64,000 bases of DNA, from positions 1 through 64,000 of the IMG/VR virus record IMGVR_UViG_3300034050_000451; one strand, written 5' to 3'. A model generated the notes under the pieces. It was given only the letters and a program-made list of their open reading frames with translations. It made no database searches and was not told the DNA's origin. Shown in pieces: positions 13,222 to 49,100 of the stretch. Position numbers and translations under genes: made by a program. Numbering within the stretch: the stretch's first letter is position 1; every line of letters starts with the position of its first letter.

Positions 13222-13253
13222 CAAATATACGAAAATTATTTGAATTTACCAAA
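13222..13253 (-). promoter_or_regulatory. Bacteroidota-type promoter for the polymerase-like gene
   Basis: TTTG-GTAAATTCAAATAATTTTCG-TATATTTG, 20-nt spacer. Confidence 0.75.
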
Positions 13254-14213
13254 TTTATTAGATATTTGTTTTATTTTAAAGATATAATTTGAAAAATAGT
13301 GCTGATGTGCTGATGTTATACTACCTTCATTAAAATTTCCATCTAATTTAGGTAGATATATGTTGGATTGAAATCCTTCAGTTCTTAAATAGTCAACTTT
13401 ATCTCTGATATGGAATATATCGTTCCACAAATCAGTTCCATTTACTTTTAAACCAGTATCAGTTACCCTACCTTCATTATGTACTCTAGCATAAGTCAAA
13501 ATTCGTTTTATTGAAGTGTGTGCTAATCCTAAATAATCTAAACTACCCATAACTTCCAAATCATCAACGAAATTAGAAGTTACATCAAATTTATCGATTA
13601 CTTTTAGTAAAGATGAGGTTCTCATTACATATGTGTGATAAATGCACATAATATTTGCTTTACTACAATGAATTATAGATGTAAAATGCTTTGGTTCATC
13701 ATAATAGTTAGTTGTCCAACTCCAAGGATGAGTCCAAGGGTGATTATTAGGAATTGTATATGCTGTCCATAAATCTCTTGTCTTTGGGGCCTCTAATGGA
13801 GTTTGAGTTTGATTTATTTGTTGTAATGTAGTATTCTCAAAGAATACAGCTGAACCATATGAGAAATCTAACTCAGTATGTTGTGTATATGTGTTTGATA
13901 AGTACTCTAATGTATCTTCTGCCAATAAATCATCATCATCCAATCGTACAATCAATTCACCATTAGCAAGTTTTACTCCAATTTTCCAAGAATTCTTAAA
14001 TAAATCGTATGGAGTATTTGATGTGTGGTATAAAACATCATTTTTAGGATTTTGTGATTTAAAATCTTTATAAATGTTAAAATTAACATCAGATGCTGAA
14101 TCATCAAAAATAATAACCTCCCAATTCGTATGAGATTGAAGTTGGACAGATGCCAATGCTTCTTTTAATAAATCAGGTCGGTTGTATGTACGAACTATAA
14201 CACTTATTTTCAC
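13236..14213 (-). CDS. family 2 (GT-A) glycosyltransferase
   Basis: KISVIVRTYNRPDLLKEALASV..WEVIIFDDSASD..GELIVRLDDDD; GTG start. Confidence 0.9.
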   Translation of the reverse strand: MKISVIVRTYNRPDLLKEALASVQLQSHTNWEVIIFDDSASDVNFNIYKDFKSQNPKNDVLYHTSNTPYDLFKNSWKIGVKLANGELIVRLDDDDLLAEDTLEYLSNTYTQHTELDFSYGSAVFFENTTLQQINQTQTPLEAPKTRDLWTAYTIPNNHPWTHPWSWTTNYYDEPKHFTSIIHCSKANIMCIYHTYVMRTSSLLKVIDKFDVTSNFVDDLEVMGSLDYLGLAHTSIKRILTYARVHNEGRVTDTGLKVNGTDLWNDIFHIRDKVDYLRTEGFQSNIYLPKLDGNFNEGSITSAHQHYFSNYIFKIKQISNKFGKFK

Positions 14214-32200: not shown

Positions 32201-35200
32201 ACCCTGTAAATTAGCAGAAATTCCATTTGCTCCATTAGATGGGTCTATATAATATGATGTATTATCCGAATCGTAGAATGTTGGTGCAGCAATACCGAAT
32301 TGACCTGAAGTTGGATATACAATACTATCTGCCGTAAAATCGGAAATGTTAGTTGCAGAAGGTGATGTGTTAATATAAACCGCACCAATTGCACTATTTG
32401 TATTGGTAGTAATACTTCGTGTAGTTCTAATAAGAGCATCAACTGATGAGTAATATCTAACATCAACATATACAGGAATGTATCTATGGTCACCACTTAC
32501 AACTACTTCAGAACCAATAGTTACTTGGAAGTGATTTGAACCTATACCATTTGCTTCAACTAATTGAACTGATGCTGCAGAAACATATCCATAAGAAACT
32601 ATATATCTTTTTCTTAAACCTTTATCGTAGTAATTTTCCGAAAGTTCAACTTCAAATAAACCAACAGAGTTCCAATCATTAAAATCAATACCAATTCGTG
32701 CAACTTCAAATCTTCTAGCTTGAGTTGCAGATGCACCTAAGTTATTGATTCCAAAATATTTATAATCACCGATTTGGAAATCATTACCTAAATTTATTGT
32801 ACCATTTACAGTAAGAGTTCCAGCAATATTTAAGTTATTAAGAACAGATGTACTATTTCCATCAATTCTATATGTTGTATCATCCGAATCATAGAAAATT
32901 GGAGAACGCATATCACCTGTTGTTGATATGGTAGTATCCCCACTATGCCACAATCTTCTACCAGTACCCCAAGTTGCAGAATCAAATGCTTGTCTTGAGA
33001 ACCATAGGTTATCACCATACTTATCTCCAACAATTGCGTAACTTTGTTTAACATCACCACCATTATAAGTTGACATCCATAGAACATCATTCCAACTTCC
33101 ACCAAATCCAAGGTTTCCGTTACTAAGCATGGCTACCTTTAACTTACCAGCTCCGAATGTAGCTGAGTTAGGTTTTTCAGTTCCCCCAGATGAATAATGT
33201 CCTCCTAAAAAAGAACCAGCAATATTTCCAGTAGAAGTATATATTCTATGGTCATAATATGTCCCTTGTTGACCATCTAATAAATCTGCATCTAATCCAG
33301 AACCAGCACCATCTGTACTACCTGTCCAAACTTTTTCATTTTCCCAATAAAGAATACCATCAGTACGCATTTCCAAATACTTACCAACAACACCACTAAT
33401 GTGAAAAGCAATACCAGTGGTTGTAGTGCTATATGATTCAGTCCATAAAGCAGCGGTAGTATAATTGTTGTTTGTTTGTGCTTTTCTAAACTGCCCTCTT
33501 ACTGATACTATTTCATTTATATTTGAAGTACTAGCTGCATCTAAATAGTATGCGGTATTATCTGAATCATAAAATATTGGTGTTCTCATGCTTTCAGCTG
33601 AGAAGAATCTACCATTTGTAAACATTGAGTGTCTTATACTCCAAGAAGTACTATCAACGCCAGATGCAAAATAATGTTGTATATCACCACTACCATCCAT
33701 ATGTCTTAACCACATATTATTGGATATAGTATTTCTAAATGTCATAGATGGATACTGTCCTCTAATATTTATTGCACCATCATTAGGAGTAGTGTTAGCC
33801 CAGTTATTTACTAATTGGATATGGCTAAGTACAGAAAGTCCAGCAGGATTTGTATAATATGCAGTATTATCCGTATCATAGAATATAGGTGCCCTCATAT
33901 CTACTTCAGATGCAATCCTTACATTAGAATACCAACCACCATTTGTTAAATTAAGATAAAAATTATTTTCACCTAAGTAATACGCGTTTGATGCTCTAAA
34001 ATTAGTACCTCTTATCGTAGAAAAAGTAACATCATCCGTTGTACGAATGTTTTGGTTCATTAAATGAACTTCAGTTGAACCTTGTCCAGTATCTATCGAT
34101 GTACCACTTATTGTACCATCTGCTATAAAATTACCAGTTCTTAATGTTGGAGTTTTAGTGGATGTTACAGTACCAAATGATGTTGTTTCAAATGATAGAG
34201 CCCAATCACCATCCCATTGAGATACAGCGAAGTTTGAATGTCCACCAATAAACTCAGTAACAACTATTTTAGGGTATGACCAAGTTGTTGCTAATTCACC
34301 GATGAATATTGTACAATAAGTACCATCATGTGCAAATCTAACAGTATATGCAGGTGCCCCAGCTGCCCCAGCAACACTTGCATTTGTATTAATCCAAGAT
34401 GTTGATGGTGAATAATTATATCCACCCATTGAGTATTCCCAATAAGTATCTCCACTATAATTGTAAATACGAACTTTTAACTCCATCATAGTGTTTGTCC
34501 ACGATTGAGGAAGTCGTATCTTTATTGCTCCAGTTACGGATGATGTACTATTATTTAATGTACCTCCATTTGGATATGTTATTTTTAATACACTACCTTG
34601 CTCTTGTGCGAAAGCATTAGCATTTATATAATTTAATCGAGATATATCATTATTAATAAAATATGTAGTGCCACCACCTACATAAATTGTATTACCAGTT
34701 ATATTTGCAAAAGTTACACTATCAGTAGTTCTAACATTTTGGTTCATCAAATGAACTTCGGTTAATCCTTGCCCAGTATTAACTTGAGCTGCTACTAAAT
34801 TACCAGCTAATGTTAATGAGTTTAAGTTTGAAGTACCGGTGTTTAAATAATAAGTTGTATCGAATAAATACATTGTATCAATTCTATCCAACAATAAGTT
34901 ACCAGTTTGTGCTGAGTTTGCTGTAAAAACATTACCCCCTACACCCAATACAATTCTCTTAGATGCGTTTATGAATTTTAATCCTGCCCAACTATTATAA
35001 TCCCAATCATTATTATCAGTAAAACGTAAAGATGATAAGTTTCTCCAAATGGTTTCACCAGTTGAGATACTTGTCATTGTCAATCCATTTGCTGCAAAAT
35101 AATAATCATTACCTGTTGTTGTAAGATTTAGTCTAGCAAATGTTATAGTATCAGATGTACGAACGTTTTGGTTCATCAAATGAACTTCAGTTAATCCTTG

Positions 35201-38029
35201 CCCAGTATCTATTTGAGTACCATATAAATTACCAGCAGATTGTAAATCAGAATCAGCGTACCATCTATCAGTTGATTCGTTCCAATAAAATTGTTTTGTT
35301 GCTGCGTTTCCTCTCTTAACTTCTATACCAGCATTTTCAGTTGGTGCAGTTGCTGCTCCAATATCTGCATTTAATGTAATGATATTATCACCTACATTAA
35401 GAGTTGTTGTATTAATATATGTTGTTGTACCACTTACAGTAAGGTCACCACTAATTGTAGCGTTACCAGTTACTGCTAATGTAGTACCATCGAATCTTAA
35501 ATTACTTTCAACGGTTGCGTTTGGTGCAGTTCCGTTTAATGTGATTACACCATTATCAGTTGTACCAGTTAATGCTAATACACCAGATGAACCAGATGTT
35601 CCACTACTACCAGATGTTCCACTCGTTCCAGAAGTTCCACTCGTTCCAGAAGTTCCACTTGAACCAGACGAACCAGAAGTTCCACTACTTCCAGATGTTC
35701 CACTACTTCCACTAGTCCCAGATGAACCACCACTACCAGCAGTACCCCTTGTTCCAGAAGTTCCACTACTTCCACTTGTCCCAGAAGTTCCACTACTTCC
35801 ACTTGTCCCAGAAGTTCCACTACTTCCAGAAGAACCAGATGTTCCACTCGTTCCAGATGTTCCACTACTTCCAGAAGAACCACTTGAACCACCACTACCA
35901 GCAGTACCTCTTGTTCCAGAAGTTCCGCTTGTACCAGATGTTCCAGAAGTTCCGCTTGTGCCAGATGTTCCAGACGAACCACTACTTCCAGATGTACCAC
36001 CAGTTCCAGCAGTTCCACCTGTACCACTACTTCCTATTAATCCATTTATTCCACTCGTTCCAGATGTTCCAGATGTTCCACTACTTCCAGAAGAACCAGA
36101 TGTTCCAGAAGAACCACTACTTCCACTTGTCCCAGAAGAACCTGAAGTTCCACTCGTTCCACTTGTACCAGATGAACCACTACTTCCAGATGAACCAGAC
36201 GTTCCACCCGTACCAGCCGTTGAATTTGTACCTGATGAACCGCTAGTTCCAGAGGTTCCAGAAGAACCACTACTTCCAGAGGTTCCGCTACTACCGCTAC
36301 TCCCAGACGAACCTGATGTACCACCATCTCCAACAACTCCATCTATACCACTCGTTCCAGAAGTACCACGAGTACCACTTGTTCCAGAAGTTCCCGAGCT
36401 TCCACTTGAACCACTACTACCACTTGAACCAGATATTCCAGATGTTCCAGATGTTCCAGAAGAACCAGAAGAACCAGACGAACCAGATATCCCACTAGTC
36501 CCAGAAGTTCCTGAAGTTCCCGAAGTTCCTCTTGTTCCAGAAGTACCACTCGTTCCCGATGAACCAGATGAACCAGATGTTCCACTACTTCCACTTGAAC
36601 CACTACTTCCGCTTGTTGCGGATGTACCACCACTTCCGCTTGTTGCTGATGTTCCAGACGAACCACTTATTCCAGAAGAACCCGATGTTCCAGATGAACC
36701 AGAGGTTCCAGAAGAACCAGAGGTACCACGTGTACCACTTGTACCAGATGTTCCACCACTTCCAGATGTTCCGCTTGAACCGAATCCACTTGAACCAGAT
36801 GAACCTGAAGTTCCACTTGTTCCAGAAGTTCCAGATGTACCGCTACTTCCACTACTTCCACTACTTCCGCTTGTACCAGATGTCCCAGAAGTTCCAGATG
36901 AACCACTAGTTCCTCTCGTACCACTACTTCCGCTTGTACCAGATGAACCACCACTACCAGATGTTCCACCACTACCAGATGTTCCACTTGTCCCAGATGT
37001 TCCACTACTTCCACTTGAACCACTACTTCCACTTGAACCACTAGCTCCAGAAGAACCACTACTACCACTTGTCCCAGAAGTACCACTTGTCCCAGACGTA
37101 CCTGAAGTACCTGAAGTACCACTCGTACCTGATGTACCAGCCGTACCAGCCGCAGGTTCCCATATCAATCCAGTCCAACGATATATGTTAGTATCTGAAG
37201 TGTTATAATATATTTCACCAACTTTACCAGATACTGGGTTTGATGTATATGATGGTATTTGTATTGTATCTTTAACTCTTAACGAACCAGTAAATTCATG
37301 CGTATCCGAAGATTGGTCACCAAATTTATTGGAACCAGATGAAAATATTATTGATGAAGATATGTATGTTGTTTTTAATTCAGTTGCGGTAATTGTACCT
37401 GCTACATTTAAACTTTTTAAAGTTGTTGTACCATCTACATTTAAATTACCAGCTATTTGAGCAGAACCACTAACTCCTAAATATTTTTCAGTTACGATTC
37501 CTACATTTACTTCTAATCCTTTATTAGGAGAAATGGTTGCGGTTGCTGAACCTGATTTTAATCGATTAATATCACCAATCGATGCCGCTGATATATTTGT
37601 TATGTTTGAACCATCTCCAGCTAAGAAAGATGCCGATACCGTTCCAGTAGTTAATAAAGAACCGGTTATATCAGTATTAACATTTATAGAAAGTTTATTA
37701 TTTGATATTCTAGCTGTCCCATCTCCACTTTGAATTTTAGATTGTGCATCTGCGGTTAATCCTTCAAATGGAATTTTGGTTAAATTTGAACCATCACCAC
37801 TAAATGAACCAGAGAATGAGCCGGAAAATTGAGAACCAACAAATTTACTACCACTAAAAGCAGAACCAGTATATGATGATGCCAAAACACCATTAGTAAC
37901 TGATAATTTAGTGTTGATATCTAACGATGCCGTTGATACCGTTAATTGCTGTACTCCGTTTACATCAACCGATAGTAAACTTTGACTGACCTGATTAATA
38001 CCATTTGGATTCTTACCTGCGTACTTCAT
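26246..38029 (-). CDS. giant tail fibre (3927 aa): Gly-X-Y stalk, multi-knob shaft, C-terminal peptidase S74-type intramolecular chaperone
   Basis: About 520 aa of GTS/GSS; about 18 FYDSDNxxYYxDPxSTS linkers; C-terminal SDERLK..ALDKISKLNG..GLSAQEV..PEIV..VNYAKVVPLLVEGIKE coiled coil. Confidence 0.85.
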   Translation of the reverse strand: MKYAGKNPNGINQVSQSLLSVDVNGVQQLTVSTASLDINTKLSVTNGVLASSYTGSAFSGSKFVGSQFSGSFSGSFSGDGSNLTKIPFEGLTADAQSKIQSGDGTARISNNKLSINVNTDITGSLLTTGTVSASFLAGDGSNITNISAASIGDINRLKSGSATATISPNKGLEVNVGIVTEKYLGVSGSAQIAGNLNVDGTTTLKSLNVAGTITATELKTTYISSSIIFSSGSNKFGDQSSDTHEFTGSLRVKDTIQIPSYTSNPVSGKVGEIYYNTSDTNIYRWTGLIWEPAAGTAGTSGTSGTSGTSGTSGTSGTSGTSGSSGSSGASGSSGSSGSSGSSGTSGTSGTSGSGGTSGSGGSSGTSGSSGTRGTSGSSGTSGTSGTSGSSGSSGSSGTSGTSGTSGTSGSSGSSGFGSSGTSGSGGTSGTSGTRGTSGSSGTSGSSGTSGSSGISGSSGTSATSGSGGTSATSGSSGSSGSSGTSGSSGSSGTSGTSGTRGTSGTSGTSGTSGISGSSGSSGSSGTSGTSGISGSSGSSGSSGSSGTSGTSGTRGTSGTSGIDGVVGDGGTSGSSGSSGSSGTSGSSGSSGTSGTSGSSGTNSTAGTGGTSGSSGSSGSSGTSGTSGTSGSSGTSGSSGSSGTSGSSGSSGTSGTSGTSGINGLIGSSGTGGTAGTGGTSGSSGSSGTSGTSGTSGTSGTSGTSGTRGTAGSGGSSGSSGSSGTSGTSGTSGSSGSSGTSGTSGSSGTSGTSGSSGTSGTRGTAGSGGSSGTSGSSGTSGSSGTSGSSGSSGTSGTSGTSGTSGTSGSSGTSGSSGVLALTGTTDNGVITLNGTAPNATVESNLRFDGTTLAVTGNATISGDLTVSGTTTYINTTTLNVGDNIITLNADIGAATAPTENAGIEVKRGNAATKQFYWNESTDRWYADSDLQSAGNLYGTQIDTGQGLTEVHLMNQNVRTSDTITFARLNLTTTGNDYYFAANGLTMTSISTGETIWRNLSSLRFTDNNDWDYNSWAGLKFINASKRIVLGVGGNVFTANSAQTGNLLLDRIDTMYLFDTTYYLNTGTSNLNSLTLAGNLVAAQVNTGQGLTEVHLMNQNVRTTDSVTFANITGNTIYVGGGTTYFINNDISRLNYINANAFAQEQGSVLKITYPNGGTLNNSTSSVTGAIKIRLPQSWTNTMMELKVRIYNYSGDTYWEYSMGGYNYSPSTSWINTNASVAGAAGAPAYTVRFAHDGTYCTIFIGELATTWSYPKIVVTEFIGGHSNFAVSQWDGDWALSFETTSFGTVTSTKTPTLRTGNFIADGTISGTSIDTGQGSTEVHLMNQNIRTTDDVTFSTIRGTNFRASNAYYLGENNFYLNLTNGGWYSNVRIASEVDMRAPIFYDTDNTAYYTNPAGLSVLSHIQLVNNWANTTPNDGAINIRGQYPSMTFRNTISNNMWLRHMDGSGDIQHYFASGVDSTSWSIRHSMFTNGRFFSAESMRTPIFYDSDNTAYYLDAASTSNINEIVSVRGQFRKAQTNNNYTTAALWTESYSTTTTGIAFHISGVVGKYLEMRTDGILYWENEKVWTGSTDGAGSGLDADLLDGQQGTYYDHRIYTSTGNIAGSFLGGHYSSGGTEKPNSATFGAGKLKVAMLSNGNLGFGGSWNDVLWMSTYNGGDVKQSYAIVGDKYGDNLWFSRQAFDSATWGTGRRLWHSGDTTISTTGDMRSPIFYDSDDTTYRIDGNSTSVLNNLNIAGTLTVNGTINLGNDFQIGDYKYFGINNLGASATQARRFEVARIGIDFNDWNSVGLFEVELSENYYDKGLRKRYIVSYGYVSAASVQLVEANGIGSNHFQVTIGSEVVVSGDHRYIPVYVDVRYYSSVDALIRTTRSITTNTNSAIGAVYINTSPSATNISDFTADSIVYPTSGQFGIAAPTFYDSDNTSYYIDPSNGANGISANLQGRIQVGTFNNSQTNTGEAWIGRASDRAAGVLTVQLGGGAGRYLEVVDNAWTTVEFSVNDSGVATAAASFRAPIFYDSNNTSYYLDPTSTTSLRTVGSWRSDSSTWDGEFSGKIQYHSNNWYFQAAGDWIWRNSGGSNVIYGNQSGELTATGNMRSPIFYDSDNTGYYTNPAGTSRMNGIAFDAASPVYSVTAGTSYQQHFQIREAGASGANGSAIAYAPSIGFHWSGVVASNITMEASGRISIRNNPGTSYENLVANNMYAYAFYDENNTGYYLDPASTSVLNAIRLGTSANNSTLSGAGDWGVRFTTDVGYIQIGPANSSYAHIYTDRGNFYMNVNDLYLNGNLVPAFGYNRGSGNLFAAIYYDANNTNYYIDGASTSNLNDLQTAGRVVIGGNFSNNAYNSVGSARLHFGGGNSDANDNYYIGTNIEGYGGSYTKLDLRWHTGIRMGAQPGYGGIRFYDTEDLGTLIFSIGTGDAHVRVTNNLYVNGYTYLGNGNADETHINDTLRVGATDSGDSHFYFGEDSSSWYGDHWYWDSGYNVYRYSRFAGTDSLIHYHDTRDTTRITYARNIVFDDFGKGIVGNYSAERLQLVFAMGDSYKPNTAGTSTANMYGIGWSHPNAGGLGGANNLNDHGLLIINNGTFRAAISSRIVASEEVRGTLFRDYNDSGYYLDPNTTGISLRIGGTVHSGGAFSSDGYSSSSPNVVTRITAPQGAAFSSDGSTGAIRIKLPFRGNNPMWTMKVRIYNYSTNQTSEYLLGNYAYDQGGYNSSATFIGGASATAHTVRFGNQDGVDCVWIGETNTGWSYPVVSVIDFTSGFRSSNADSQSRNWNIAVVTSFGTVQTAITPEIRLSNTYAPTFRADTDMRAPIYYDTNTAYYINGDGASNLNTLQTYSYQGNGNVGGTGNASWHPSGIYSAGYNWLYGGINMNGGTLDGAGPIYGTIYYDRNDSGYYADPASTSNFYNLNLTGAKHTYLTINPGNGWEAMVRYIGGSGSSWYVGKRTSTQLLGSTDAFHMYSETAGRTVGGYDTAGNHYAYGSSRATIFYDIDDTTYYMNPNSNTYLYGTFQVNGGHGDSQIGVRLLSGNNGAGAGEINLRMWVSEPGVTWNWGGFGYNVTNNNGSPNGFGRINTAHGQAYMRFSDGGDLYFYNTNTSGTRVTNMEMYPNNTVLFNNYATGGNSLRAPIFYDSDNTGYYGDFASTSRINAINYDNLYWAGDTSYGFIGRNVYADTVNGRGSDPLELNYYDGGDVYIGPGGGNKNLRANLYYDYANTAYYLDPNGTARLSYVVANGGIRIDGNENLYLDNNYGQSIVGVYTSVRYQGIFAMGNAYKLAIDGTGTGNLYGLSWSHPNAGGQAGFLNDHGLLVMNYGTTFAAISSRGWFRTSVQAPIFYDNDDTGYYGNYAGDRSTSVNGFTARTVEGTKGTWKYNIPRFIHTGDSNYWVGSMGWGTTDFNTMMTWGSGFIDSWSNPSNQPSGTSHWVGTQAYHYTNAYNSAYGWQLVGGPIGNLRFRQSWPNAGTWRTVPMLDVNDGNSGAMYAGIYYDSADSAYYADPASTSRLNITKTALKAHNDMSGYGEGNWVSDFNRTPISSFTFGEDKYNGGPSGTWWFQVNMRHANSSNYWGTQLAYGWEDNANEIYQRNITGGSFSGWVRYLNSNNYSGYSNFGTGTVYGGIYYDGNNSGYYGDFASTSRFNTTITDTTYFGSDTNKGRAQGYGTWSNSFHKTAYMSFDWNANYDTYSNHGIASTDLNGSFSDSMSINSFNDINLRLDSNDNNANSYVRIHDNTTGQSVSVAYIGRESGNPIAYFNNRVYGNVYYHNSDTAYYLAPNGTSRLNRTNYDYVYSYNWVYAQGDVIAYYSDERLKTKVGSIENALDKISKLNGFYYVENDLAKSFGYKNEKRQLGLSAQEVQEVLPEIVTLAPFDTETDKNNNIVGSKSGEDYLTVNYAKVVPLLVEGIKEQTEIINSQQKQIDELKEMIKSLIK
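35582..37150 (-). repeat. Gly-Thr/Ser-Ser collagen-like tract
   Basis: Gly at every third residue for about 520 aa; GC-rich relative to the rest of the window. Confidence 0.95.
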
Positions 38030-38041
38030 TAATCTTTATAT

Positions 38042-38374
38042 TTATGTAATTTCTAATACTGATACTACAACATCAGCTGATGTGTTCACCGATGATGTTA
38101 CAGTAATAGAGTCATTTGCTTCTAATACTACTTTTTGGTCACCACCTACTAAAATAGTTGATGAACCTTGTGGAATTAATACTCCTTTAATTAAATATTT
38201 TGTTACCCCAGCTGAGTTATCAGTTATCTGAACATCAACGTTGATGTTTTGAGCAACAATATTTGCTACACTAACCCCAATTACCGTTGCAACAGCATTG
38301 GATGGAGTCGTATAAACACTTAAACCACCCGTTCCGGCTGGTCCTTTAACACTATTTTTAAATGTATTTGCCAT
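38042..38374 (-). CDS. small virion/fibre-associated beta protein (paralog of the outer halves of 52111..52971)
   Basis: MANTFKN..VYTTPS..YLIKGVLIP..KVVLE..DVVVSVLE. Confidence 0.65.
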   Translation of the reverse strand: MANTFKNSVKGPAGTGGLSVYTTPSNAVATVIGVSVANIVAQNINVDVQITDNSAGVTKYLIKGVLIPQGSSTILVGGDQKVVLEANDSITVTSSVNTSADVVVSVLEIT

Positions 38375-38385
38375 ATTTTATTTTT

Positions 38386-38706
38386 TTATCCCAATGCAAT
38401 CGCAAATGCTATCGCTGAATCCAATACATTTACACCATCCACATTAAATGAACCGCCTTGTAAATCTATCGAACCAGAAACCGCAATAGAGCCACTTGAT
38501 ACCAATACATATTGAGTAGTATTACCTTTATCATACCCTAATCGTAAACTATCTTTTACACTTAGGTTAGTAAATTCAGCAGTTGTTACTTCAATATCTC
38601 CCTTAAAGGAACCAGTAAAACTTCCAGTAAATGAACCACTTAGGGTTGCATATGCGGAAGGTGCTTGGTTAATTGAGCCCGAAAAACTTGGTGCATCTAT
38701 TCTCAT
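38386..38706 (-). CDS. short fibre-like protein with SGS/TGS motifs
   Basis: SGSFTGSFTGS; C-terminal SAIAFAIALG; late motif at 38733-38741. Confidence 0.6.
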   Translation of the reverse strand: MRIDAPSFSGSINQAPSAYATLSGSFTGSFTGSFKGDIEVTTAEFTNLSVKDSLRLGYDKGNTTQYVLVSSGSIAVSGSIDLQGGSFNVDGVNVLDSAIAFAIALG

Positions 38707-38757
38707 TTGCTATTTATTCCATTCTTTATAGGTATAAATATAAACAAATTTCTTTTA

Positions 38758-39210
38758 CTACATTGGTTTAGCCGGCCAGCTTAAATTATATGGATTTTGT
38801 TGAGATGTTACATCTCTTAAAGATTGTCTATATGTTTGCCACTCAACTAAAGTAGTACCACTTATAGGTGAGTCTTGAAATTGGGTCCAATCTGATTGTG
38901 CTAATAAAGCATCTCTCATAATTCTAATTTCTACCCATTTTTCTTCAAGTTTTACTGAAATTTCTGATTCAGTTGCATCGGTTATATTCCAAACTTGAAT
39001 ATATGATGAATCGGATAGGATTGGAGTACCTTCCTCTATGTTTTTTGTATAATCATCAGTATATTCAGTAGCTTCTACATAATATACATCAAATGATTCT
39101 AATACCTCATTAGTTAACACCGCAGGGAAACTTGTATTTGGATTTTCCAATTTAAGTTCACTAATTGTGTAAGGATATCTTATATTTCCGTTTTCTAATT
39201 TTAAATACAT
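38758..39210 (-). CDS. tail fibre assembly chaperone
   Basis: WVEIRIMRDALLAQSDWTQFQDSP..EWQTYRQSLRDVTSQ..WPAKP. Confidence 0.85.
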   Translation of the reverse strand: MYLKLENGNIRYPYTISELKLENPNTSFPAVLTNEVLESFDVYYVEATEYTDDYTKNIEEGTPILSDSSYIQVWNITDATESEISVKLEEKWVEIRIMRDALLAQSDWTQFQDSPISGTTLVEWQTYRQSLRDVTSQQNPYNLSWPAKPM

Positions 39211-39217
39211 ATCTTTA

Positions 39218-40096
39218 TTATTTCCAATTTACAGGTATTGATGCGTAATTTGTAATTCCAGTACAATTGTTAAATGCGTTTGTACCTAATGGTTCAGGTG
39301 ACCTAGACCAAAGTGCTTCAACAGTTCCCCAACTAGCTGAACCATTGGTTATGGAACTCATATTAAATATATTCGTAAATACCGTAACATTTGGATTATA
39401 TGAAAATGTTGGTATATTTGTTAACGCTCTATTATTTCTAAATGTAGATGAAAAGTTAATTACTTGTGTATTATATCTGAATAATTCATTTGGTACACTC
39501 ACTAATGATGTACATGCGTTAAAAGTTGAGTTAAATGATGTTACTAAAGTACATTCATCAAATAAATTGTTTGGAACTGATGTTATTCTTGTAAATGAAA
39601 ATGTATCTATAAAATCCAATACTATTGGAGAATAACTAAATAAATCAGATGGGATTGATGTTATACCAGTACCCCTAAATGTATTGTTAAATTGAGTTAT
39701 TCTACTTAAACCAATTGCACCACCAGGTATTGATGTTATATTTGTACATCCATAAAAGTTAATACTTCTTAATCCAACATTTCCCCAATCAAGTATCGCA
39801 GTATATAATACTCTATATGTACTATTATCAACCCTAAATCCAGGTAGTGAACCAATTACAGATACCGTATATGTACCAGCGGTTGCATATGTATGAAATC
39901 TATTAATATCAGTTACACTTTCTATAATAGGTGATGAATTACCATCACCCCATCCTACTTGAACTTTTGGTTGAGTACCACCAACAGTTACTAAAGGTAA
40001 TTCAAATAATTGCCCAGCACCAACTGTTAGTTGGAATTGAAATGGTAGTACCTCACTACCACCGGCTGCTGTTACTAATCTTCTTGCTATACTCAT
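39218..40096 (-). CDS. BspA/DUF285-like leucine-rich-repeat fibre tip or receptor-binding partner with PKD-like N-domain
   Basis: VQVGWGDGNS..HTYATAGTYTV; repeats FNNTFRGTGITSIPSDLF, FIDTFSFTRITSVPNNLF, FNSTFNACTSLVSVPNELF. Confidence 0.7.
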   Translation of the reverse strand: MSIARRLVTAAGGSEVLPFQFQLTVGAGQLFELPLVTVGGTQPKVQVGWGDGNSSPIIESVTDINRFHTYATAGTYTVSVIGSLPGFRVDNSTYRVLYTAILDWGNVGLRSINFYGCTNITSIPGGAIGLSRITQFNNTFRGTGITSIPSDLFSYSPIVLDFIDTFSFTRITSVPNNLFDECTLVTSFNSTFNACTSLVSVPNELFRYNTQVINFSSTFRNNRALTNIPTFSYNPNVTVFTNIFNMSSITNGSASWGTVEALWSRSPEPLGTNAFNNCTGITNYASIPVNWK

Positions 40097-40103
40097 AACT
40101 TTC

Positions 40104-43100
40104 TTAACTTAAATTTGCTGCGGATAAGAATCCATAATATGTTGTTCCACCATCATAAGTATAGAATACTAAAATATCAGTTCCATTTGCAGTTAACGCA
40201 GGTGCTATACCACCAGCCCAATCTACTGATGCCGGCCATGTTGTTGTAAAGTTACCACCATTCACATAAACCAACGTAAATCCAAATCCCTGAGGAGATG
40301 ATGGTGGGTTTGAGAATGTGTAAGTAACATTTGCATTAGCCGTATATCTAAAATTATTTGCAGTTGTTAAATTAATTGTTACACTTCCACCCGTACCTAA
40401 ATTAGAAAATAATTCTCTAAAGTTAGGTGTATAAACTGATGTATTTGCAGTTACATTATTTCCAGTTATATTACCTGATATAGTTGCGTTACCCGTTACA
40501 TCTAATAAAGTACCATCATAAGTAAGTCCACTTTCAGCTGTAATATTGGGTGATGACCCATTTAGTGTAAGAACTCCGTTATTAGTAGTTCCAGTAATTG
40601 TAGCCGATATCCCAGATGAACCAGATGTACCAGATGAACCACCATCACCAGTAATACCAGATGTACCACTTAAACCACTTGAACCACTTGAACCAGCCAT
40701 TCCAGATGTTCCAGATGAACCACTACTTCCAAATAAAGTTCCATCTAAACCAGATGTACCTGCGGTTCCAGATGAACCATTTGTACCCAATCCAGATGAA
40801 CCCGATGTACCAGATGTACCGGATGAACCAAATAAAGTTCCATCCTGCCCAGATGTTCCAGAAGTACCATTAGTACCTAATCCAGATGTACCATTAGTAC
40901 CTAATCCAGATGTACCAGAAGTACCACTACTTCCGAATAAAGTTCCATCTTGTCCACTTGTTCCAGATGAACCATTTGTTCCAATGCCAGATGTTCCATT
41001 ACTTCCACTTACTCCGCTTGTTCCAGAAGAACCACTACTTCCAAATAAAGTTCCATCTTGTCCACTTGTCCCAGATGTTCCAGCAGTACCCGTTATACCA
41101 GATGTACCATCAGTACCAATACCAGATGTTCCCGATGTTCCAGAAGAACCAAATAAAGTTCCATCCTGTCCAGATGTTCCCGAAGTACCAGCGGTGCCCG
41201 TTATACCAGAAGTACCAGATGAGCCACTTTCACCACTTGTACCAGAAGTACCTGATGAACCAAATAATGTTCCATCTTGTCCAGAAGTACCTGATGTTCC
41301 ATTCGTACCAACTCCAGATGTTCCAGAAGAACCACTTTCACCTGATGTTCCGCTTGTACCAGACGAACCAAATAAAGTTCCATCTTGTCCAGAAGTACCC
41401 GATGTTCCATTAGTTCCAACACCAGATGTTCCAGACGAACCACTTTCACCTGATGTACCAGATGTTCCAGATGAACCGAATAAAGTTCCATCTTGCCCAG
41501 AAGTACCTGATGTTCCATTTGTACCTAACCCAGAAGTACCAGATGAACCACTTTCACCTGATGTTCCAGATGTACCAGATGAACCGAATAACGTACCATC
41601 CTGTCCACTTGTTCCAGAAGTACCATTTGTACCTAACCCAGATGTTCCTGATGAACCACTTTCACCACTTGTACCAGATGTTCCAGACGAACCGAATAAA
41701 GTTCCATCTTGTCCAGAAGTACCTGATGTTCCATTTGTCCCAATACCACTTGTACCAGATGAACCACTTTCACCACTTGTCCCAGATGTTCCACTACTTC
41801 CAAATAAAGTTCCATCTTGTCCACTAGTCCCAGAGGTTCCGTTTGTACCTAAACCAGAAGTACCTGATGAACCACTTTGACCACTTGTTCCAGATGTTCC
41901 ACTACTTCCAAATAAAGTTCCATCTTGTCCGCTTGTTCCAGAGGTTCCGTTTGTACCTAAACCAGAAGTACCTGATGAACCACTTTGACCTGATGTACCA
42001 GATGTACCACTACTTCCAAATAAAGTTCCATCTTGTCCGCTTGTTCCAGACGTACCAGCAGTTCCACTACTTCCGCTTGTTCCAGATGAACCAGATGTAC
42101 CAGATGTACCAGCAGTTCCATTACTTCCAAAGAATGTTCCATCTTGTCCGCTTGTTCCAGAAGTTCCAGATGTACCACTTGAACCGGATGTACCATTAGT
42201 ACCAACACCAGATGTTCCAGAGGTTCCAGATGAACCAAAGAATGTTCCATCTTGTCCGCTTGTTCCAGAAGTTCCAGATGTACCGCTTGAACCACTCAAA
42301 CCACTTGTTCCACTACTTCCACTTGTACCAGAAGTACCCGATGAACCAGAAGAACCGAAGAATGTTCCATCAACTCCACTTGTTCCAGAAGTTCCACTAC
42401 TTCCCGATGTTCCAGTTGAACCAGAAGAACCCGAAGTACCACTACTTCCAAATAAAGTTCCATCTAAACCAGATGTACCTGCGGTTCCAGATGTTCCAGA
42501 TGTACCACTTGAACCAGATGTACCACTACTTCCACTACTTCCACTTGTCCCAGAAGTTCCACTAATTCCCGATGAACCAGACGTACCATTAGTACCAGAT
42601 GAACCAGATGAACCACTTGTACCAGACGAACCTGAAGTTCCATTTAAACCTGAAGTTCCAGATGTACCATTTGAACCAGATAAACCACTTGTTCCAGATG
42701 TACCATATGAACCAGATGTACCATCCGTTCCAGTTGAACCAGAAGTTCCACTACTTCCACTCGTTCCATCAACTCCACTTGTTCCAGATGAACCAGATGA
42801 ACCAGATGTACCATCCGTTCCCGTTGAACCACTTGAACCAGAAGTTCCACTACTTCCACTCGTTCCATTCGAACCACTTGTCCCACTTGTCCCAGAAGAA
42901 CCAGAAGTACCAGAAGTTCCACTACTACCAGTTGAACCAGAAGAACCAGAAGTACCACTACTTCCTGATGTACCATTCGAACCACTCGTACCACTTGTTC
43001 CAGAAGAACCACTTGTCCCATCCGTTCCCGTTGAACCACTTGTTCCAGATGTTCCACTACTTCCGCTTGTTCCATTTGAACCACTCGTACCACTTGTCCC

Positions 43101-46100
43101 AGAAGAACCACTACTTCCCGATGTACCATCAGTACCGGTTGAACCAGATGAACCAGAAGTACCACTACTTCCACTCGTTCCGTTTGTACCAGAGGTTCCA
43201 GATGTTGCACTTGTTCCAGATGTACCTGATGTTCCACTCGTTCCCGATGTTCCAGAAGAACCAGATGTTCCAGATGAACCATTCTCACCACTAGTTCCAG
43301 AAGTTCCAGAAGTTCCCGATGTACCACTTGTCCCAGATGTACCAGAAGTGCCAGAAGTTCCCGATGTACCAGATGTACCCGATGTTCCATCTAATCCGCT
43401 TGTTCCACTTGAACCAGAAGTACCATCAACTCCACTTGTCCCGCTTGAACCAGAAGTTCCAGATGAACCACTTTCACCGCTCGTACCACTCGTACCAGAA
43501 GAACCACTACTTCCACTCGTTCCACTCGTTCCAGACGAACCAGATGAACCAGATGAACCAGAAGAACCCGATGTCCCACTACTTCCACTACTTCCTGATG
43601 AACCCGATGTTCCACTACTTCCACTACTTCCACTTGAACCACTACTACCACTTGAACCAGAAGTTCCACTACTACCACTCGTTCCAGAGGTACCAGAAGT
43701 ACCACTACTTCCACTTGTTCCAGAAGAACCAGAGGTTCCACTTGTCCCAGAAGAACCTGAAGTTCCACTCGTACCAGATGTTCCACTACTACCAGAAGTA
43801 CCAGATGTACCAGAAGTTCCGTTTTTATCAACAATTTCAATAATTCCAATCATTGATGAATGAACTGCACATTGATAAACAATATTGTTTGGTGCATCTT
43901 CAGGTACTCTATATGCTATTAAATCAGTTGTTCCAGCTAATCCATTTAATGGGTCATTATTTATTGTACCATCTACAACTGAAGTATTACCGCTTGATAA
44001 TCTTAATGCAAATGGGTGTGATGCTGAAACTCCACTTACATCAAAGTAAAATAATTCACCTCTTACTAATGTTAAGGTTGGGAATGTAGCATCATCATAT
44101 CCATCAAATGCATAATTGAATCCATCATTAATTACTTCGAAAAGTCTACCACCTTCTCTACCAGATGTTCCAGAAGAACCAGAAGTGCCCGATGTTCCCG
44201 AAGAACCAGATGTACCAGTAGTACCACTTGAACCAGACGTTCCACTCGTACCACTACTTCCACTTGAACCACTTGTTCCAGATGAACCTGATGAACCAGA
44301 GGTTCCAGACGAACCTGATGTTCCTGAAGAACCACTACTTCCACTACTTCCACTCGTTCCGCTTGTTCCAGATGAACCAGACGAACCTGATGAACCAGAG
44401 GTTCCACTACTTCCACTACTTCCGCTTGAACCACTACTTCCGCTTGAACCAGATGTTCCAGATGAACCACTACTACCACTTGAACCACTTGAACCAGATG
44501 TTCCAGAAGAACCACTTGAACCAGATGTTCCAGAAGAACCACTACTTCCAGAAGAACCAGATGTTCCACTACTTCCAGATGTTGCTGAAGTACCAGACGT
44601 TCCAGATGTTCCACTTGTCCCACTTGTTCCAGATGAACCACTACTTCCACTACTTCCAGAAGTACCAGACGTTCCAGATGTTCCAGATGTTGCTGAAGTA
44701 CCAGACGTTCCAGATGTTCCACTTGTTCCACTTGTCCCAGATGAACCAGACGTACCATTTGTTCCAGATGTACCTGATGTTCCAGATGTACCTGATGTTC
44801 CACTCGTACCAGAAGTTCCACTACTTCCACTCGTTCCACTCGTTCCGCTTGTTCCAGATGTACCACCAGTTCCAGATGTACCACCAGTTCCAGATGTACC
44901 ATCTACTCCACTCGTACCAACAGCTGCATCGATTGATTGTTGTTCTAATCTTCCAGTTGTTGGGTTATAGGTAACCACTAAATTTGTTGAACCTAATGGT
45001 AAATTTTGTATGAATGTACTACCAGTTACAATTAAACTACCCGATACATTTAAACTTCCCGTTAGTGCAGCATAACCTTCAAATGGGAAACCAGTACCAC
45101 TTCCACCACCAACTGCGTTTAATGCGTATTCGGCTATTGATGCAAATGATGATGAGAACACATACATTGATGCGGTTTGAGATGATAGTAAATCACCATC
45201 ACCAGTACCACCGCCACCTAAGATAGTTACTAATATACCATCAGAACCAGAATCAATTACACTTACACCAGAACCAGTAAAGTTAATTTTTCCAGTTTCA
45301 GTTTGTACTAACGAACTTGTATAGTAAATGAATAAATCAGTTCCACCACTACCAGCTTCACCAGCATTTAATGCGTAAGATGCAGTAAGAGCGAAAGATG
45401 AACTCAACACCGTCATAGATGATGTTTGTTCGTTTCTTACAAAGTTTTGTAAATCGTTTAATAATGCAAGAGATGCCGAATCAATACCAGCTACATTTAA
45501 TGCAGTATCAGCAGTTTCTGCTGAAATTGCTCTAGACGCTGATGGTACAATTCCAATTACGTTGTTACCACTAATTGCTCCACTTATTTTTGAACCACCA
45601 CTACCAACTACTACAACTCCAGAAGTTAAACCACTAAATACTACTCTAACTCTATCACTGTCCAATGGTATGATAGCTTGAGGTATAATCATTCCATTTG
45701 TACCAGCTTCATAAACTTGTACGATTGGATAATCAACATCAAAGTTGTGTACAACCGTTACTTCAGTTACATTTGTAAATGGTTCTGCGGTTGTTGGTGT
45801 ACTCTCAGGTACAGGTACATATTTAGAACGGGCCGCATCATAGATAAGAATATCTCTATCTTCAGCATCACCCTCTCCATAGTATCCACCATAGAATGAA
45901 CCGGTAATTTGTCCACCATAAATTACAGGTGCGTATATATTTTTTTCAACACTTAAGTTTCCACTAACTGATGCGGATGCGTTAACAACTAATCCAAAGT
46001 TTGGTGAAAGTACCGTTGTAAATGAACCACTTTGTAAAAGTGAAGTTTCAAATGATAAGTTAGCTATATTGATGTTAGTCAATCCACTACCATCTCCAAC

Positions 46101-49100
46101 AAATGATGAACCAGAAGATAAAATAACACTTCCACCAGTTACAAATAATCCACCACTTACACTAAGTGAACCAGATATAGATGTTTTTGTACCAACCTCA
46201 AATCCTTTATCAGGTGAAATTACCGCCTGAGTTGAACCAGATATAATTCTATCTAATTGAAGGTCTTGTAATGCGTTTGCAGGAATGTTAAATAATCCAC
46301 TACCATCTCCATCAAATCGAGATGCTGTTATTGGAACGTTTACATCTAATTTTAATGGGTCAATAATTGCTATACCAGAGCCAGAGTTAATTTTTACTAA
46401 TTGTAAATCTTCAAGTGCTTCTAATGGAATATTGAATAACCCACTACCATCACCACTAAATAAAGATGCCGATATTGAACCACTAATATCAACTGAACCC
46501 GTAAACTCAGAACCACTTCGTGCGGATTCTACTTTAAATCCAAAATTAGGTGAAACTGAAGCCGTTACTGAACCAGATGAAATTCTTGGAGATGCTGCAG
46601 CGGTTACGTTTGTGATAAAAGTACCATCACCAAATATAAATTTGTTTACATATATTGATTCAGATACATAAACTGAACCACTAAATTCGGATTTAATTGC
46701 TCTTAATGTAGTACCATCTAAAACTCTAAAGTGGCCATCAGTAGATACCGAAGCAGTAACGGAACCAGTGTAAATTCTAGAAGTATCAATTGCCAAATTA
46801 GCAATATCAATATTTGTCAATCCACTACCATCTCCAGTATAAATACCATCAATAGTTATTGAACCAGATACATCAATTGAACCAGTAAATTTAGAACCAC
46901 TATCCAAAGATTCAACTTTGAATCCTTCAGTTGGTGTTACGGATGCCGTAACTGAACCACTCACTAAACGATATACATCAAATGATAAGTTAGCAAGTGA
47001 AATATTAGTTAATCCACCACCATCTCCAAAGAATGAACCAGAGAATGAACCAGATAATTCATTTGCTTTTACAATACTTGAACTTATAGTTTGGGTTACA
47101 TATAAACTTCCACTTACATCAACTGAACCAGTAAATTCAGAACCACTTTCAGCTGATACTACTACAAATCCAAAATCAGGTGTTACTGATGCGGTTACAC
47201 TACCACTTTTAATTTCAGTTGAAATAAGTGCTTCAATTGCTTCAGTAGAAAGTGCGGTTAGTGGGATATTAAATAAGTTTTCACCACTACCACTAAATGA
47301 TGAACCACTAACAACCTCAATATTACCACTTACAAAAAGTGAACCACTAAATGTAGAACCACTTTCGATTGAAGTTACAACAAATCCGTTATCAGGTGTT
47401 ACTGATGCGGTAACTGAACCACTTGCGATTAAGTTTGATAAAAGTGCATCAGGCGTTAATGCTGCTCTTGGTATATCGAACAATCTAGCACCACTACCAC
47501 TAAACGATGAACCACTACTTAATTCTACTCCACCACTTACAAATAATGAACCTGTAAATTGTGAACCACTATCAATTGATTCTACTTTAAATCCAAACTC
47601 ATTCGAAACTGATGCCGTTACACTACCACTAGCCAATATTCCACTTTGGATTGCCAATAGTGAATTAATTGCATCTTGTGCATCAGGTGAAAATGCTGAT
47701 ATTGGGATATTGAATAAATCAGCTCCACTACCACTAAATGTTGAACCACTATTTATAGAAACACCACCACTTACAAAAAGTGAACCACTAAATGTAGAAC
47801 CACTTTCGATTGAAGTTACAACAAATCCGTTATTAGGGTTAACCGATGCCGTTACACTTCCACTAGCAATTAATGTTGCTGCTTCAGTAAGTGCTGATTG
47901 TGGGATATTAAATAATCCACTACCATCACCAGTGATTACACCATCAACAGTCAAAGAACCAGTTATTTTAACCGAACCAGTCATTTGTTGTATATCTGTC
48001 AATGAATCACCAAATATATTTGAACCAGAAGAATAAATTACTTCCGAATTTATAAACGTTACATTTATTTCTGTTGCGTTGATTGCCCCAGCTACATTTA
48101 AATCACCATCAATAGATGCGGATGTATTAACAACTAATCCTAAATTTGGTGAAATAGATGCAGTAGCAGAACCACTAGCAATTCTATTTGAATCTCCAGT
48201 TAAATTAGAAAAAGGAATATCGAATAAATTTCTACCACTACCACTAAATGAACCAGTTACTAATTCTATATTACCAAAGAATTTTGAACCACTTTCAATT
48301 GATGTTACAACAAATCCAGTATTTGGTGCTACTGATGCGGTAACTGAACCAGATGTAATAGTTGTACTAATAAGTGCATCAGGTGTTAGTGCTGTTCTTG
48401 GTATGTTAAATAATTTTGCACCACTACCAGAGAAAGAACCAGTTACCAATTGAACATCACCAAAGAAAGTTGAACCACTTACAACTGATGTTACAATAAA
48501 TCCATTTTGAGGGTGAGTTGATGCGGTAACCGAACCACTAAATATTTTAGAAGTATCTAAATCAGAAATTGCTGATTTTGGTATATCAAATAATCTTGCA
48601 CCACTACCAGAGAAAGAACCAGTTGCTAATTGAATATCACCAAAGAAAGTTGAACCACTTTGATATGATATAACAACAAACCCAGTATTTGGTGCTACCG
48701 ATGCAGTTACACTTCCACTTACAATGAATGATGAAAGTAACGCATCTTCAGTTAATGCTGAACGGGGGATATTTGTTAACCCCTCACCACTACCACTAAA
48801 GTATCCACTACCAGATAGAATTTTTACTTGCCCTAATACTTTAACAGAACCAGTAAATTGTGAACCACTATCCAATGATTCTACTTTGAATCCAAAATTA
48901 GGAGATACTGATGCAGTAACAGACCCACTTTGGATACGAGTTGATGCAATTACCTCTTCAGCAAATGCAGATAAAGGAATATTAGTTAATCCAGCTCCAC
49001 TACCACTAAAGAATGAACCAATATTAGCTTGTATGTTTCCATTTGCTATGATATCATCATTAGATACAATACCATTATTTGCTATTATATTACCATAGAA

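What the first reader, a model, noticed from the sequence alone, without database searches (positions are those of the whole stretch)
35582..44920. About 1,800 residues of proline-free Gly-X-Y (GTS/GSS) stalk
Seen: tracts of about 520 aa (3927-aa protein) and about 250 + 1070 aa (3994-aa protein), with Gly every third residue and X/Y almost only Thr/Ser. Both proteins exit their stalk through the same adapter (GTT(D/N)NGV(I/L)TLNG..PN.T.ES.L..DGT.L.VTGNATISG). Established: collagen rises about 0.29 nm per residue; Gly-rich polyglycine-II bundles are an alternative fold for G-X-X. Inference: either 150-300-nm flexible tethers, stabilised without Pro (perhaps by glycosylation), or compact hydroxyl-faced PGII bundles. 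Unusual biomaterial either way.
Basis: partly seen in the sequence, partly recalled or inferred. Interest (0 to 1): 0.6.

Follow-up and report, generated by a model that had tools for sequence, protein, structure and literature searches.

The report
Proline-free collagen-like stalks in phage fibres
Two giant tail-fibre genes of an uncultured 271-kb lake-water phage carry about 1,850 residues of Gly-Thr-Ser/Gly-Ser-Ser collagen-type repeat with no proline and almost no charge, a known kind of phage fibre stalk in an extreme composition shared by dozens of related phages.

Summary
P0001 (3927 aa, 26246-38029, minus strand) has a 524-aa Gly-X-Y tract. P0002 (3994 aa, 40104-52088, minus strand) has tracts of 258 and 1072 aa. 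There are 0 Pro in 1,854 residues. Both tracts end in the same about 48-aa module (31/45 identical).

One correction: the last 616 aa of the long tract is a 36-aa repeat with two register shifts per unit (G-L-G and G-T-L-F-G).

The genes lie in a T4-like tail module. P0001 ends in a Peptidase_S74 autochaperone. P0002 ends in a tail-fibre tip domain and is followed by a tail-fibre assembly chaperone.

The tracts are not assembly artefacts:
- Seven other contigs match at 100% identity with no gaps.
- The longest exact DNA repeat is 56 nt.
- Ser uses both codon families.

About 65 distinct relatives keep the design over about 14,900 triplets, with 13 Pro in all. In-register Gly replacements are 49 Ala, 15 Ser and 1 Lys.

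Best reading: homotrimeric collagen-like triple-helix stalks, about 150 nm and up to about 380 nm if fully helical. This is inferred; no fold was obtained. A PGII bundle is not supported, and glycosylation is untested. This is a new compositional variant of a known kind.

The parts
26246..38029 (-). P0001, 3927-aa fibre protein: N-terminal domain (aa 1-294), Gly-X-Y tract, exit module, about 3,000-aa distal region, C-terminal autochaperone
35576..37147 (-). P0001 Gly-X-Y tract, aa 295-818 (524 aa, 0 Pro; 1 register switch; 3 Gly positions replaced by Ala/Ser)
   Evidence: Pfam Collagen E 6.6e-54
35432..35575 (-). P0001 exit module (aa 819-866) shared with P0002 and conserved across the family
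26447..26626 (-). Peptidase_S74 intramolecular chaperone domain of P0001 (aa 3802-3861), beginning with an S-D-E-R-L-K motif
   Evidence: E 5.6e-13; sequence
38758..39210 (-). 150-aa tail-fibre assembly chaperone (Phage_tail_APC), downstream of P0002
   Evidence: PF16778 E 1.5e-17
39218..40096 (-). 292-aa ORF between P0002 and the chaperone; matches only phrog_9915 (unknown function)
40104..52088 (-). P0002, 3994-aa fibre protein: about 2,390-aa N-terminal region rich in 60-80-aa repeats, tract A, globular insert, tract B, exit module, small tip
44145..44918 (-). P0002 tract A, aa 2391-2648 (258 aa, 0 Pro, no register shift)
43821..44144 (-). 108-aa globular insert between the tracts (aa 2649-2756); all-beta, cupredoxin-like lead with His...Cys-x2-His-x2-Met
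42453..43820 (-). P0002 tract B, first part, aa 2757-3212 (456 aa uninterrupted; one Gly replaced by Ala)
40605..42452 (-). P0002 tract B, second part, aa 3213-3828 (616 aa): 36-aa/108-nt repeat, about 13.7 copies, each with a one-residue deletion (G-L-G) and a one-residue insertion (G-T-L-F-G)
40461..40604 (-). P0002 exit module (aa 3829-3876)
40107..40460 (-). P0002 C-terminal tip (aa 3877-3994), homologous to C-termini of annotated tail fibres of Roseobacter, Synechococcus and Microcystis phages
   Evidence: (phrog_19200)
23782..26118 (-). Tail sheath (context: the fibre genes sit directly upstream of sheath and tube)
   Evidence: 47% identity to Microcystis phage Mel-JY01 sheath
52982..61300 (-). 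Third giant fibre protein (2772 aa), no Gly-X-Y tract (context)
13236..14213 (-). GT2 glycosyltransferase, one of five in the 271-kb genome; possible but unproven link to fibre glycosylation

Best explanation
The tracts are collagen-like triple-helical stalks of two homotrimeric tail fibres of a T4-like jumbo phage from lake water.

Shown:
- Each chain offers Gly at every third residue, with Thr/Ser at X and Ser at Y.
- Each tract ends in a conserved exit module.
- P0001 carries a C-terminal Peptidase_S74 domain. P0002 is followed by a separate tail-fibre chaperone gene.

Inferred:
- Trimerisation starts at the C-terminal end, helped by these chaperones.
- The exit module sets the chain register, and the triple helix then zips toward the N-terminus, as the PfC domain does for prophage collagens (PMC3368898).
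- Stability without Pro or charge would come from length, from end clamps, from hydration networks of Ser/Thr hydroxyls, possibly from O-glycans, and, in the distal part of P0002, from the periodic Leu/Phe-bearing register shifts.
- If fully helical at about 0.29 nm per residue, the stalks measure about 150 nm (P0001), and about 74 plus about 307 nm (P0002). These lengths would place a very large distal domain (P0001) or a small receptor-binding tip (P0002) far from the baseplate.
For: - Pfam Collagen scores 180 and 393 bits against a cut-off of 27.2, and PHROG collagen-like tail-fibre families match.
- Gly is 33-35%, and X and Y differ in composition: family-wide X is T 58% / S 30% and Y is S 74%.
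- Of 65 in-register Gly replacements across about 14,900 triplets, 49 are Ala, 15 Ser and 1 Lys. That is what a sterically buried position predicts.
- Constraint acts on the protein, not on a fresh DNA repeat. DNA units are only 60-80% alike, GTS is spelt by up to 26 different 9-mers, and Ser uses AGY and TCN about equally.
- The context is a fibre module: sheath, tube and gp15-like genes flank it, with Peptidase_S74, Phage_tail_APC and a tip homologous to annotated tail fibres.
- The P0001-type tract has a median length of 489 aa over 31 diverged relatives. Close relatives differ by whole triplets: 474 vs 477 aa and 500 vs 530 aa.
- The exit module is conserved in both fibre types.
- Prophage collagen-like fibre proteins are proven trimers with a triple helix nucleated by a C-terminal domain (PMC3368898). 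Gly-X-Y repeats rich in P/S/T were noted in the P-SSM2 tail-fibre candidate orf028 (PMC1079782).
Against: - No structural evidence was obtained.
- Known stable bacterial and phage collagens rely on Pro at X, Thr at Y and/or charged pairs (PMC8968730, PMC3368898). These tracts have none, so stability is an open question.
- The last 616 aa has two register shifts per 36 aa, which is unusual for a continuous triple helix.
- Pfam and PDB collagen matches are driven largely by the Gly periodicity.
- Trimer state is inferred from domain families, not measured.
Confidence: 0.65

Rival explanations
1. The tracts are intrinsically disordered Gly/Ser/Thr linkers, possibly O-glycosylated and mucin-like. 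They would act as entropic tethers between folded fibre domains, with no triple helix.
For: There is no Pro and almost no charge, so the usual triple-helix stabilisers are missing (PMC8968730, PMC3368898). The AF2 monomer model is unconfident. The genome has five GT2 genes.
Against: A disordered linker does not need Gly at strictly every third residue over 14,900 triplets. It also does not need Ala/Ser-only replacement at that position, distinct X and Y compositions, or a conserved exit module. The periodicity persists despite heavy synonymous and codon-family drift.
Confidence: 0.2
2. The tracts, or at least the interrupted 616-aa part, fold into compact polyglycine-II bundles or sandwiches, as in snow-flea antifreeze protein or the gp38 adhesin of T2/S16-type phages (own knowledge of those folds).
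For: G-X-X periodicity fits. In aa 3213-3828 the segments of 16 and 20 residues separated by hydrophobic breaks could in principle be hairpin arms. PGII domains do occur in phage adhesins (own knowledge).
Against: Gly is only 33-35%, with bulky-enough Thr/Ser on the other two faces. Uninterrupted runs of 258, 402 and 456 aa contain no turn sites. The monomer fold of the interrupted part gave no confident compact structure (pLDDT 38.7). No PGII-type family or solved structure matched; only collagens did.
Confidence: 0.06
3. The tract lengths are an assembly artefact (repeat inflation or collapse).
For: Logan contigs break inside the tracts and none spans a tract. One IMG/VR contig ends inside the P0001 tract. 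No long reads were available.
Against: Seven other IMG/VR contigs from different metagenome ids match at 99.995-100% identity with no gaps, six of them over both genes. The longest exact repeat is 56 nt and no 75-mer is repeated. Pieces from four lake runs (2020-2025) tile the region with zero differences and no indels. Diverged relatives have similar lengths.
Confidence: 0.03

Closest known systems
Phage and prophage collagen-like tail-fibre proteins (Smith et al. 1998 'Bacteriophage collagen', cited in PMC1079782; E. coli O157 prophage EPclA-D, PMC3368898; Prochlorococcus phage P-SSM2 orf028, PMC1079782)
   Same: A Gly-X-Y tract lies inside a tail-fibre gene. A C-terminal module follows the tract, and in EPclA that module trimerises and nucleates the helix. 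The stalk sits between globular domains. P-SSM2 orf028 is also from a T4-like aquatic phage and is rich in P/S/T.
   Different: EPclA stability is attributed to high Pro at X and many charged residues. Here Pro is 0 and charge is near 0. The tracts are far longer (524-1072 aa, against short Col domains). No PfN, PCoil or PfC domain was found by Pfam. Thr sits at X rather than Y.
Bacterial collagen-like proteins (Scl1/Scl2, BclA and others; review PMC8968730)
   Same: Unhydroxylated Gly-X-Y. Thr-rich hydration networks are proposed as stabilisers. BclA-type Thr glycosylation is a precedent (own knowledge).
   Different: Those have 19-31% Pro at X and Thr mainly at Y (PMC8968730). This family has Thr at X, Ser at Y and no Pro.
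Uncultured 735-kb phage LR756501/LR756503 (unannotated record)
   Same: A 2,816-aa ORF holds 2,334 aa of Gly-X-Y with 1 Pro, 808 Ser and 632 Thr. This is the same compositional class, with even longer tracts.
   Different: It has a different exit sequence and different flanking domains. Nothing is annotated or described for it in the record.
Peptidase_S74 (endosialidase-type) intramolecular-chaperone fibres
   Same: P0001 ends in this domain, with the S-D-x-R-x-K-type start. The family is known from trimeric fibres and spikes (own knowledge).
   Different: About 2,900 residues separate the collagen tract from this domain, so its role in nucleating the helix is indirect at best.
Polyglycine-II bundle proteins (snow-flea antifreeze protein; gp38 PGII sandwich)
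   Same: Three-residue periodicity with Gly.
   Different: Those have about 45% Gly and short helices joined by turns (own knowledge). Here Gly is 33-35% and runs are continuous for hundreds of residues.

Membership tests
Collagen triple helix repeat (Pfam PF01391) | Score above the curated cut-off | tested here: met
   180 and 393 bits against a cut-off of 27.2; 33 of the 34 segment matches in the genome lie in these two ORFs
Collagen triple helix repeat (Pfam PF01391) | Gly at every third residue over long runs, tolerating only the smallest residues at that position | tested here: met
   Runs of 258, 402 and 456 aa. Family-wide Gly replacements are 49 Ala, 15 Ser and 1 Lys
Collagen triple helix repeat (Pfam PF01391) | Substantial imino-acid content or charged pairs at X/Y as stabilisers | tested here: not met
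   0 Pro in 1,854 aa. P0001's tract has 6 Arg and 2 Asp. There are 13 Pro in about 14,500 family triplets
Collagen triple helix repeat (Pfam PF01391) | Three chains wound in a triple helix (CD, melting, protease resistance, EM) | not testable with these tools
The monomer model was unconfident
Phage collagen-like tail fibre | Tract lies in a fibre gene of the tail module, with a fibre chaperone or autochaperone | tested here: met
EPcl-type prophage collagens (PfN-PCoil-Col-PfC) | PfN, PCoil and PfC flanking domains | tested here: not met
   Pfam finds only Collagen, Peptidase_S74 and a spurious PCI match. Flanks scanned at E up to 10 gave nothing relevant
Polyglycine-II bundle or sandwich | High Gly (well above one in three) and short helices separated by turns | tested here: not met
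   Gly is 33-35% and continuous runs reach 456 aa. Only aa 3213-3828 has 16- and 20-aa segments
Polyglycine-II bundle or sandwich | A single chain folds into a compact domain | tested here: inconclusive
   AF2 monomer of P0002:3358-3610 gave pLDDT 38.7
Peptidase_S74 intramolecular chaperone | C-terminal domain match with the conserved Ser-containing start motif | tested here: met
   PF13884 E 5.6e-13 at aa 3802-3861; S-D-E-R-L-K
Cupredoxin (type-1 copper) domain, for the 108-aa insert | Significant match to PF00127 or a solved cupredoxin | tested here: not met
   No Pfam match at E up to 10. The best PDB match has E 1.5. The model has pLDDT 49. It remains a lead only

The most novel reading that the evidence does not exclude
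These fibres contain a natural, unmodified collagen triple helix with no imino acids and essentially no charged residues. It would be hundreds of nanometres long and held together only by Ser/Thr hydroxyl hydration, by end modules, and by a conserved periodic pair of register shifts bearing Leu/Phe. That would be a stabilisation regime not covered by current triple-helix rules.
Probability: 0.3. Interest if true: 0.75.

Novelty: new variant of a known kind. Interest (0 to 1): 0.5.

Why it matters
Current accounts of triple-helix stability rest on Pro/Hyp, charged pairs or glycosylated Thr. A conserved family supplies about 14,900 natural triplets with virtually none of these, and its selection signature points to a buried Gly position.

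This family is therefore a ready-made test of how little sequence information a triple helix needs. It is also a source of very long, simple, hydroxyl-rich rod sequences for biomaterials work.

For phage biology, it implies fibres several times longer than those of T4 in abundant freshwater jumbo phages. That bears on how such phages reach cells through capsules, sheaths or mucilage.

Tried and rejected
- **Trimer fold.** This gives no evidence either way.
- **Monomer fold.** It gave pLDDT 38.7 and is uninformative.
- **Insert fold.** AF2 on the 108-aa insert with a two-sequence alignment gave pLDDT 49, too low for a fold search.
- **Cupredoxin checks.** PF00127 against the genome found nothing. 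Pfam on the flanks at E up to 10 found nothing useful.
- **Tract against cultured phages.** tblastn of the tract found nothing, because the low-complexity filter masks it.
- **Exit module against cultured phages.** tblastn found only two weak matches (E 6e-3 and 1e-2) to its second half in fibres without collagen. No cultured phage with this design was found.
- **Word search.** It returned only unnamed metagenomic proteins.
- **Genome collection.** It returned Bacteroidota and other MAG loci that share distal fibre domains but have no Gly-X-Y tract.
- **Closest cultured relative.** Microcystis phage Mel-JY01, the closest by sheath, has no such fibre genes in the 20 kb either side of the sheath.
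- **PDB chain 8zxl/9ius.** It matched strongly, but the paper that cites these entries is a study of collagen assembly, not of phage.
- **Literature.** Searches for proline-free or GTS-type collagen gave nothing relevant.
- **Read joints.** The joints have sides of only 20-58 letters and were treated as repeat cross-matches, not as alternative lengths.
- **Not used.** The large representative-protein search was not run; the family scans and loci already answered the question.

Full report
**What is there.** The window is the first 64 kb of a 270,865-bp IMG/VR virus record rated complete. It has about 31-35% G+C, and all but one of the long genes are on the minus strand. Two giant ORFs carry the tracts: P0001 (3927 aa, 26246-38029) and P0002 (3994 aa, 40104-52088).
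- P0001 aa 295-818 is a 524-aa Gly-X-Y tract.
- P0002 has a 258-aa tract (aa 2391-2648), a 108-aa globular insert, and a 1072-aa tract (aa 2757-3828).
- The 1,854 tract residues contain no Pro. Gly is 33-35%. X is Thr or Ser, and Y is about 88% Ser.
- Three parts are essentially uninterrupted: P0001's tract, tract A, and the first 456 aa of tract B. Six Gly positions there are replaced, five by Ala and one by Ser.
It is a 36-aa (108-nt) repeat of about 13.7 copies. Each unit has a one-residue deletion (G-L-G) and a one-residue insertion (G-T-L-F-G), giving 29 register shifts in all.
- The shared exit module is real, with 31 of 45 residues identical.

**Context.** The genes sit in a T4-like tail module. 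In transcription order it reads: a gp15-like sheath stabiliser, a 2772-aa fibre protein, a 286-aa ORF, P0002, a 292-aa ORF, a 150-aa Phage_tail_APC chaperone, P0001, tail sheath, tail tube and a baseplate-hub-like protein.
- P0001 ends in a Peptidase_S74 intramolecular chaperone (E 5.6e-13), starting at an S-D-E-R-L-K motif.
- P0002 ends about 165 residues after its tract. Its small tip is homologous to the C-termini of annotated tail fibres of Roseobacter, Synechococcus and Microcystis phages.
- PHROG matches are to tail-fibre and 'collagen like minor tail' families.
- The closest cultured relative by sheath is Microcystis phage Mel-JY01 (47%), followed by Flavobacterium phages. It has no such fibre genes in the 20 kb either side of the sheath.
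- Eighteen lake-water metagenome runs hold the P0001 tract region, so this is a freshwater phage. The host is unknown. Distal fibre domains recur in Bacteroidota MAGs, which is only a weak hint.

**Not an artefact.**
- Seven other IMG/VR contigs from different metagenome ids match at 99.995-100% identity without a gap, six of them across both genes.
- The longest exact DNA repeat in the tracts is 56 nt, and no 75-mer is repeated.
- Tandem units are only 60-80% alike.
- Logan contigs of four lake runs from 2020-2025 tile 40400-45100 in pieces, with zero differences and no indels. None spans the whole tract, and no long reads were on offer. Long-range length therefore rests on the agreeing assemblies.
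- The long plus-strand ORFs inside the tracts are a by-product of the codon repeat.

**Family-wide design.** Related loci from many metagenomes keep the same gene pair. The upstream fibre has 910-1270 aa of tract and only 150-200 residues after it. The downstream fibre has a tract near its N-terminus and 1,500-3,100 residues after it.
- Over 65 distinct ORFs and about 14,500-14,900 triplets there are 13 Pro in all. X is T 58% / S 30%, and Y is S 74%.
- The 65 in-register Gly replacements are 49 Ala, 15 Ser and 1 Lys.
- The one-residue insertion is Phe in 281 of 283 cases.
- The P0001-type tract has a median of 489 aa across 31 relatives. Close relatives differ by whole triplets: 474 vs 477 aa and 500 vs 530 aa.
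- The exit module is conserved in both fibre types.
- Some relatives interrupt the tract with a 114-aa globular domain, up to three times.
- The same compositional class occurs outside this family. The unannotated 735-kb uncultured phage LR756501 has a 2,816-aa ORF with 2,334 aa of Gly-X-Y and one Pro.

**What it most likely is.** Four features point to selection on a sterically buried Gly position in a regular structure rather than on a disordered linker:
- strict one-in-three Gly;
- Ala/Ser-only replacement at that position;
- different X and Y preferences;
- persistence despite synonymous drift. GTS is spelt by up to 26 different 9-mers, and Ser uses AGY and TCN about equally.

Exactly one Gly per triplet, with hundreds of residues lacking any turn site, fits three chains packing their Gly faces on a common axis. 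It does not fit a PGII bundle, which needs more Gly and frequent chain reversals (own knowledge of those folds). The fibre context supplies the trimer logic through Peptidase_S74 and a tail-fibre chaperone.

Prophage collagen-like fibre proteins are experimentally trimeric. Their triple helix melts at 42 °C, and their C-terminal PfC domain re-nucleates it (PMC3368898). Gly-X-Y repeats with P/S/T were noted in a tail-fibre candidate of the T4-like cyanophage P-SSM2, citing 'Bacteriophage collagen' (PMC1079782).

I therefore read the tracts as collagen-like stalks, with the conserved exit module as the likely registration site. At about 0.29 nm per residue they would measure about 150 nm (P0001), and about 74 plus about 307 nm (P0002). 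All of this is inference. No fold was obtained.

**What is unusual.** Described bacterial collagens have 19-31% Pro at X and Thr mainly at Y (PMC8968730). The stability of EPclA is attributed to Pro and charged residues (PMC3368898). This family has neither, and it places Thr at X and Ser at Y.

How such a helix would be stable is open. Candidates are:
- Ser/Thr hydration networks, as proposed for Scl2 (PMC8968730);
- sheer length and end clamps;
- low habitat temperature;
- the periodic Leu/Phe register-shift module;
- O-glycosylation. Thr glycosylation is a recognised stabiliser (PMC3368898). The genome has five GT2 genes, one at 13236-14213, but nothing links them to the fibres.

**Limits.**
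- The monomer model of the interrupted repeat (pLDDT 38.7) and the model of the insert (pLDDT 49) are too weak to use.
- Matches to solved collagens reflect periodicity, not homology.

**Verdict.** This is a new compositional and length variant of a known kind, phage collagen-like fibre stalks. It is widespread in uncultured freshwater phages and, in the paper searches run here, undescribed.

Noticed in passing
window 43821-44144 (P0002 aa 2649-2756); also L076:1384-1740 and L083 (Synechococcus phage Sf-CH5 tail fibre SfCH5_216, aa ~100-200): The 108-aa globular insert between the two collagen-like tracts has a conserved His...Cys-x2-His-x2-Met-x-Gly pattern like a type-1 copper (cupredoxin) site. 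The support is weak: an atlas hint to PF00127, a PDB match to a cupredoxin domain of Cu nitrite reductase at E 1.5, and an all-beta model at pLDDT 49. The same module occurs in a cultured cyanophage tail fibre.
   Followed up: partly
L026, L027, L044, L060, L067 (three copies), L068 (coordinates): Relatives of P0001 interrupt their Gly-X-Y tract with a different conserved 114-aa globular domain, giving a beads-on-a-stalk layout. Its function is unknown.
   Followed up: no
L085:5746-14193 (LR756501.1, 735-kb uncultured phage): A 2,816-aa ORF holds 2,334 aa of Gly-X-Y (808 Ser, 632 Thr, 1 Pro) in runs up to 1,272 aa. The neighbouring 1,903-aa ORF has 363 aa more. The record is unannotated.
   Followed up: partly
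window 26246-33900 approx. (P0001 aa ~1380-3630): At least 15 copies of an F-Y-D-x-D-N-T-x-Y-Y-type motif occur, spaced 80-400 aa apart. The huge distal part of P0001 is therefore itself built of repeated modules.
   Followed up: no
window 45800-51900 approx. (P0002 aa ~80-2000): The N-terminal about 2,000 aa of P0002 contains about 18-26 copies of motifs that recur mostly every 60-80 aa (S-G-S-V-T-A-S-V and G-x-G-x-x-L-F-N-I). The Pfam PCI match at aa 553-578 has no stretch passing on its own and looks spurious.
   Followed up: no
window 13236-14213 and G000 143969-144331, 235494-235814, 243160-243633, 244811-245221: The phage genome has five GT2-family glycosyltransferase genes. Their targets are unknown.
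   Followed up: partly
window 44168-44638: Word depth in lake runs rises to 440-4,500, against about 14-30 in the non-tract flanks. The 31-mers of this Gly-Ser-Ser-rich stretch are therefore shared with many other sequences in the same lakes.
   Followed up: no
window 35379-37208 (+), 40546-41880 (+) and other plus-strand ORFs inside the tracts: Long open frames on the opposite strand and in other frames come from the stop-free codon repeat. They are not genes.
   Followed up: yes
G000:C1:65998-66108 (just beyond the window): There is a weak sub-threshold Collagen match in a 650-aa ORF.
   Followed up: no
L086-L092 (Marinifilum, Bacteroidales, Flavobacteriaceae, Bacteroidia, Pseudobdellovibrionaceae and Thiotrichaceae assemblies): A domain of P0001 (about aa 1120-1330) recurs in large proteins of mostly Bacteroidota genomes and MAGs that have no Gly-X-Y tract. 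This is a weak host hint or a shared adhesin module.
   Followed up: partly
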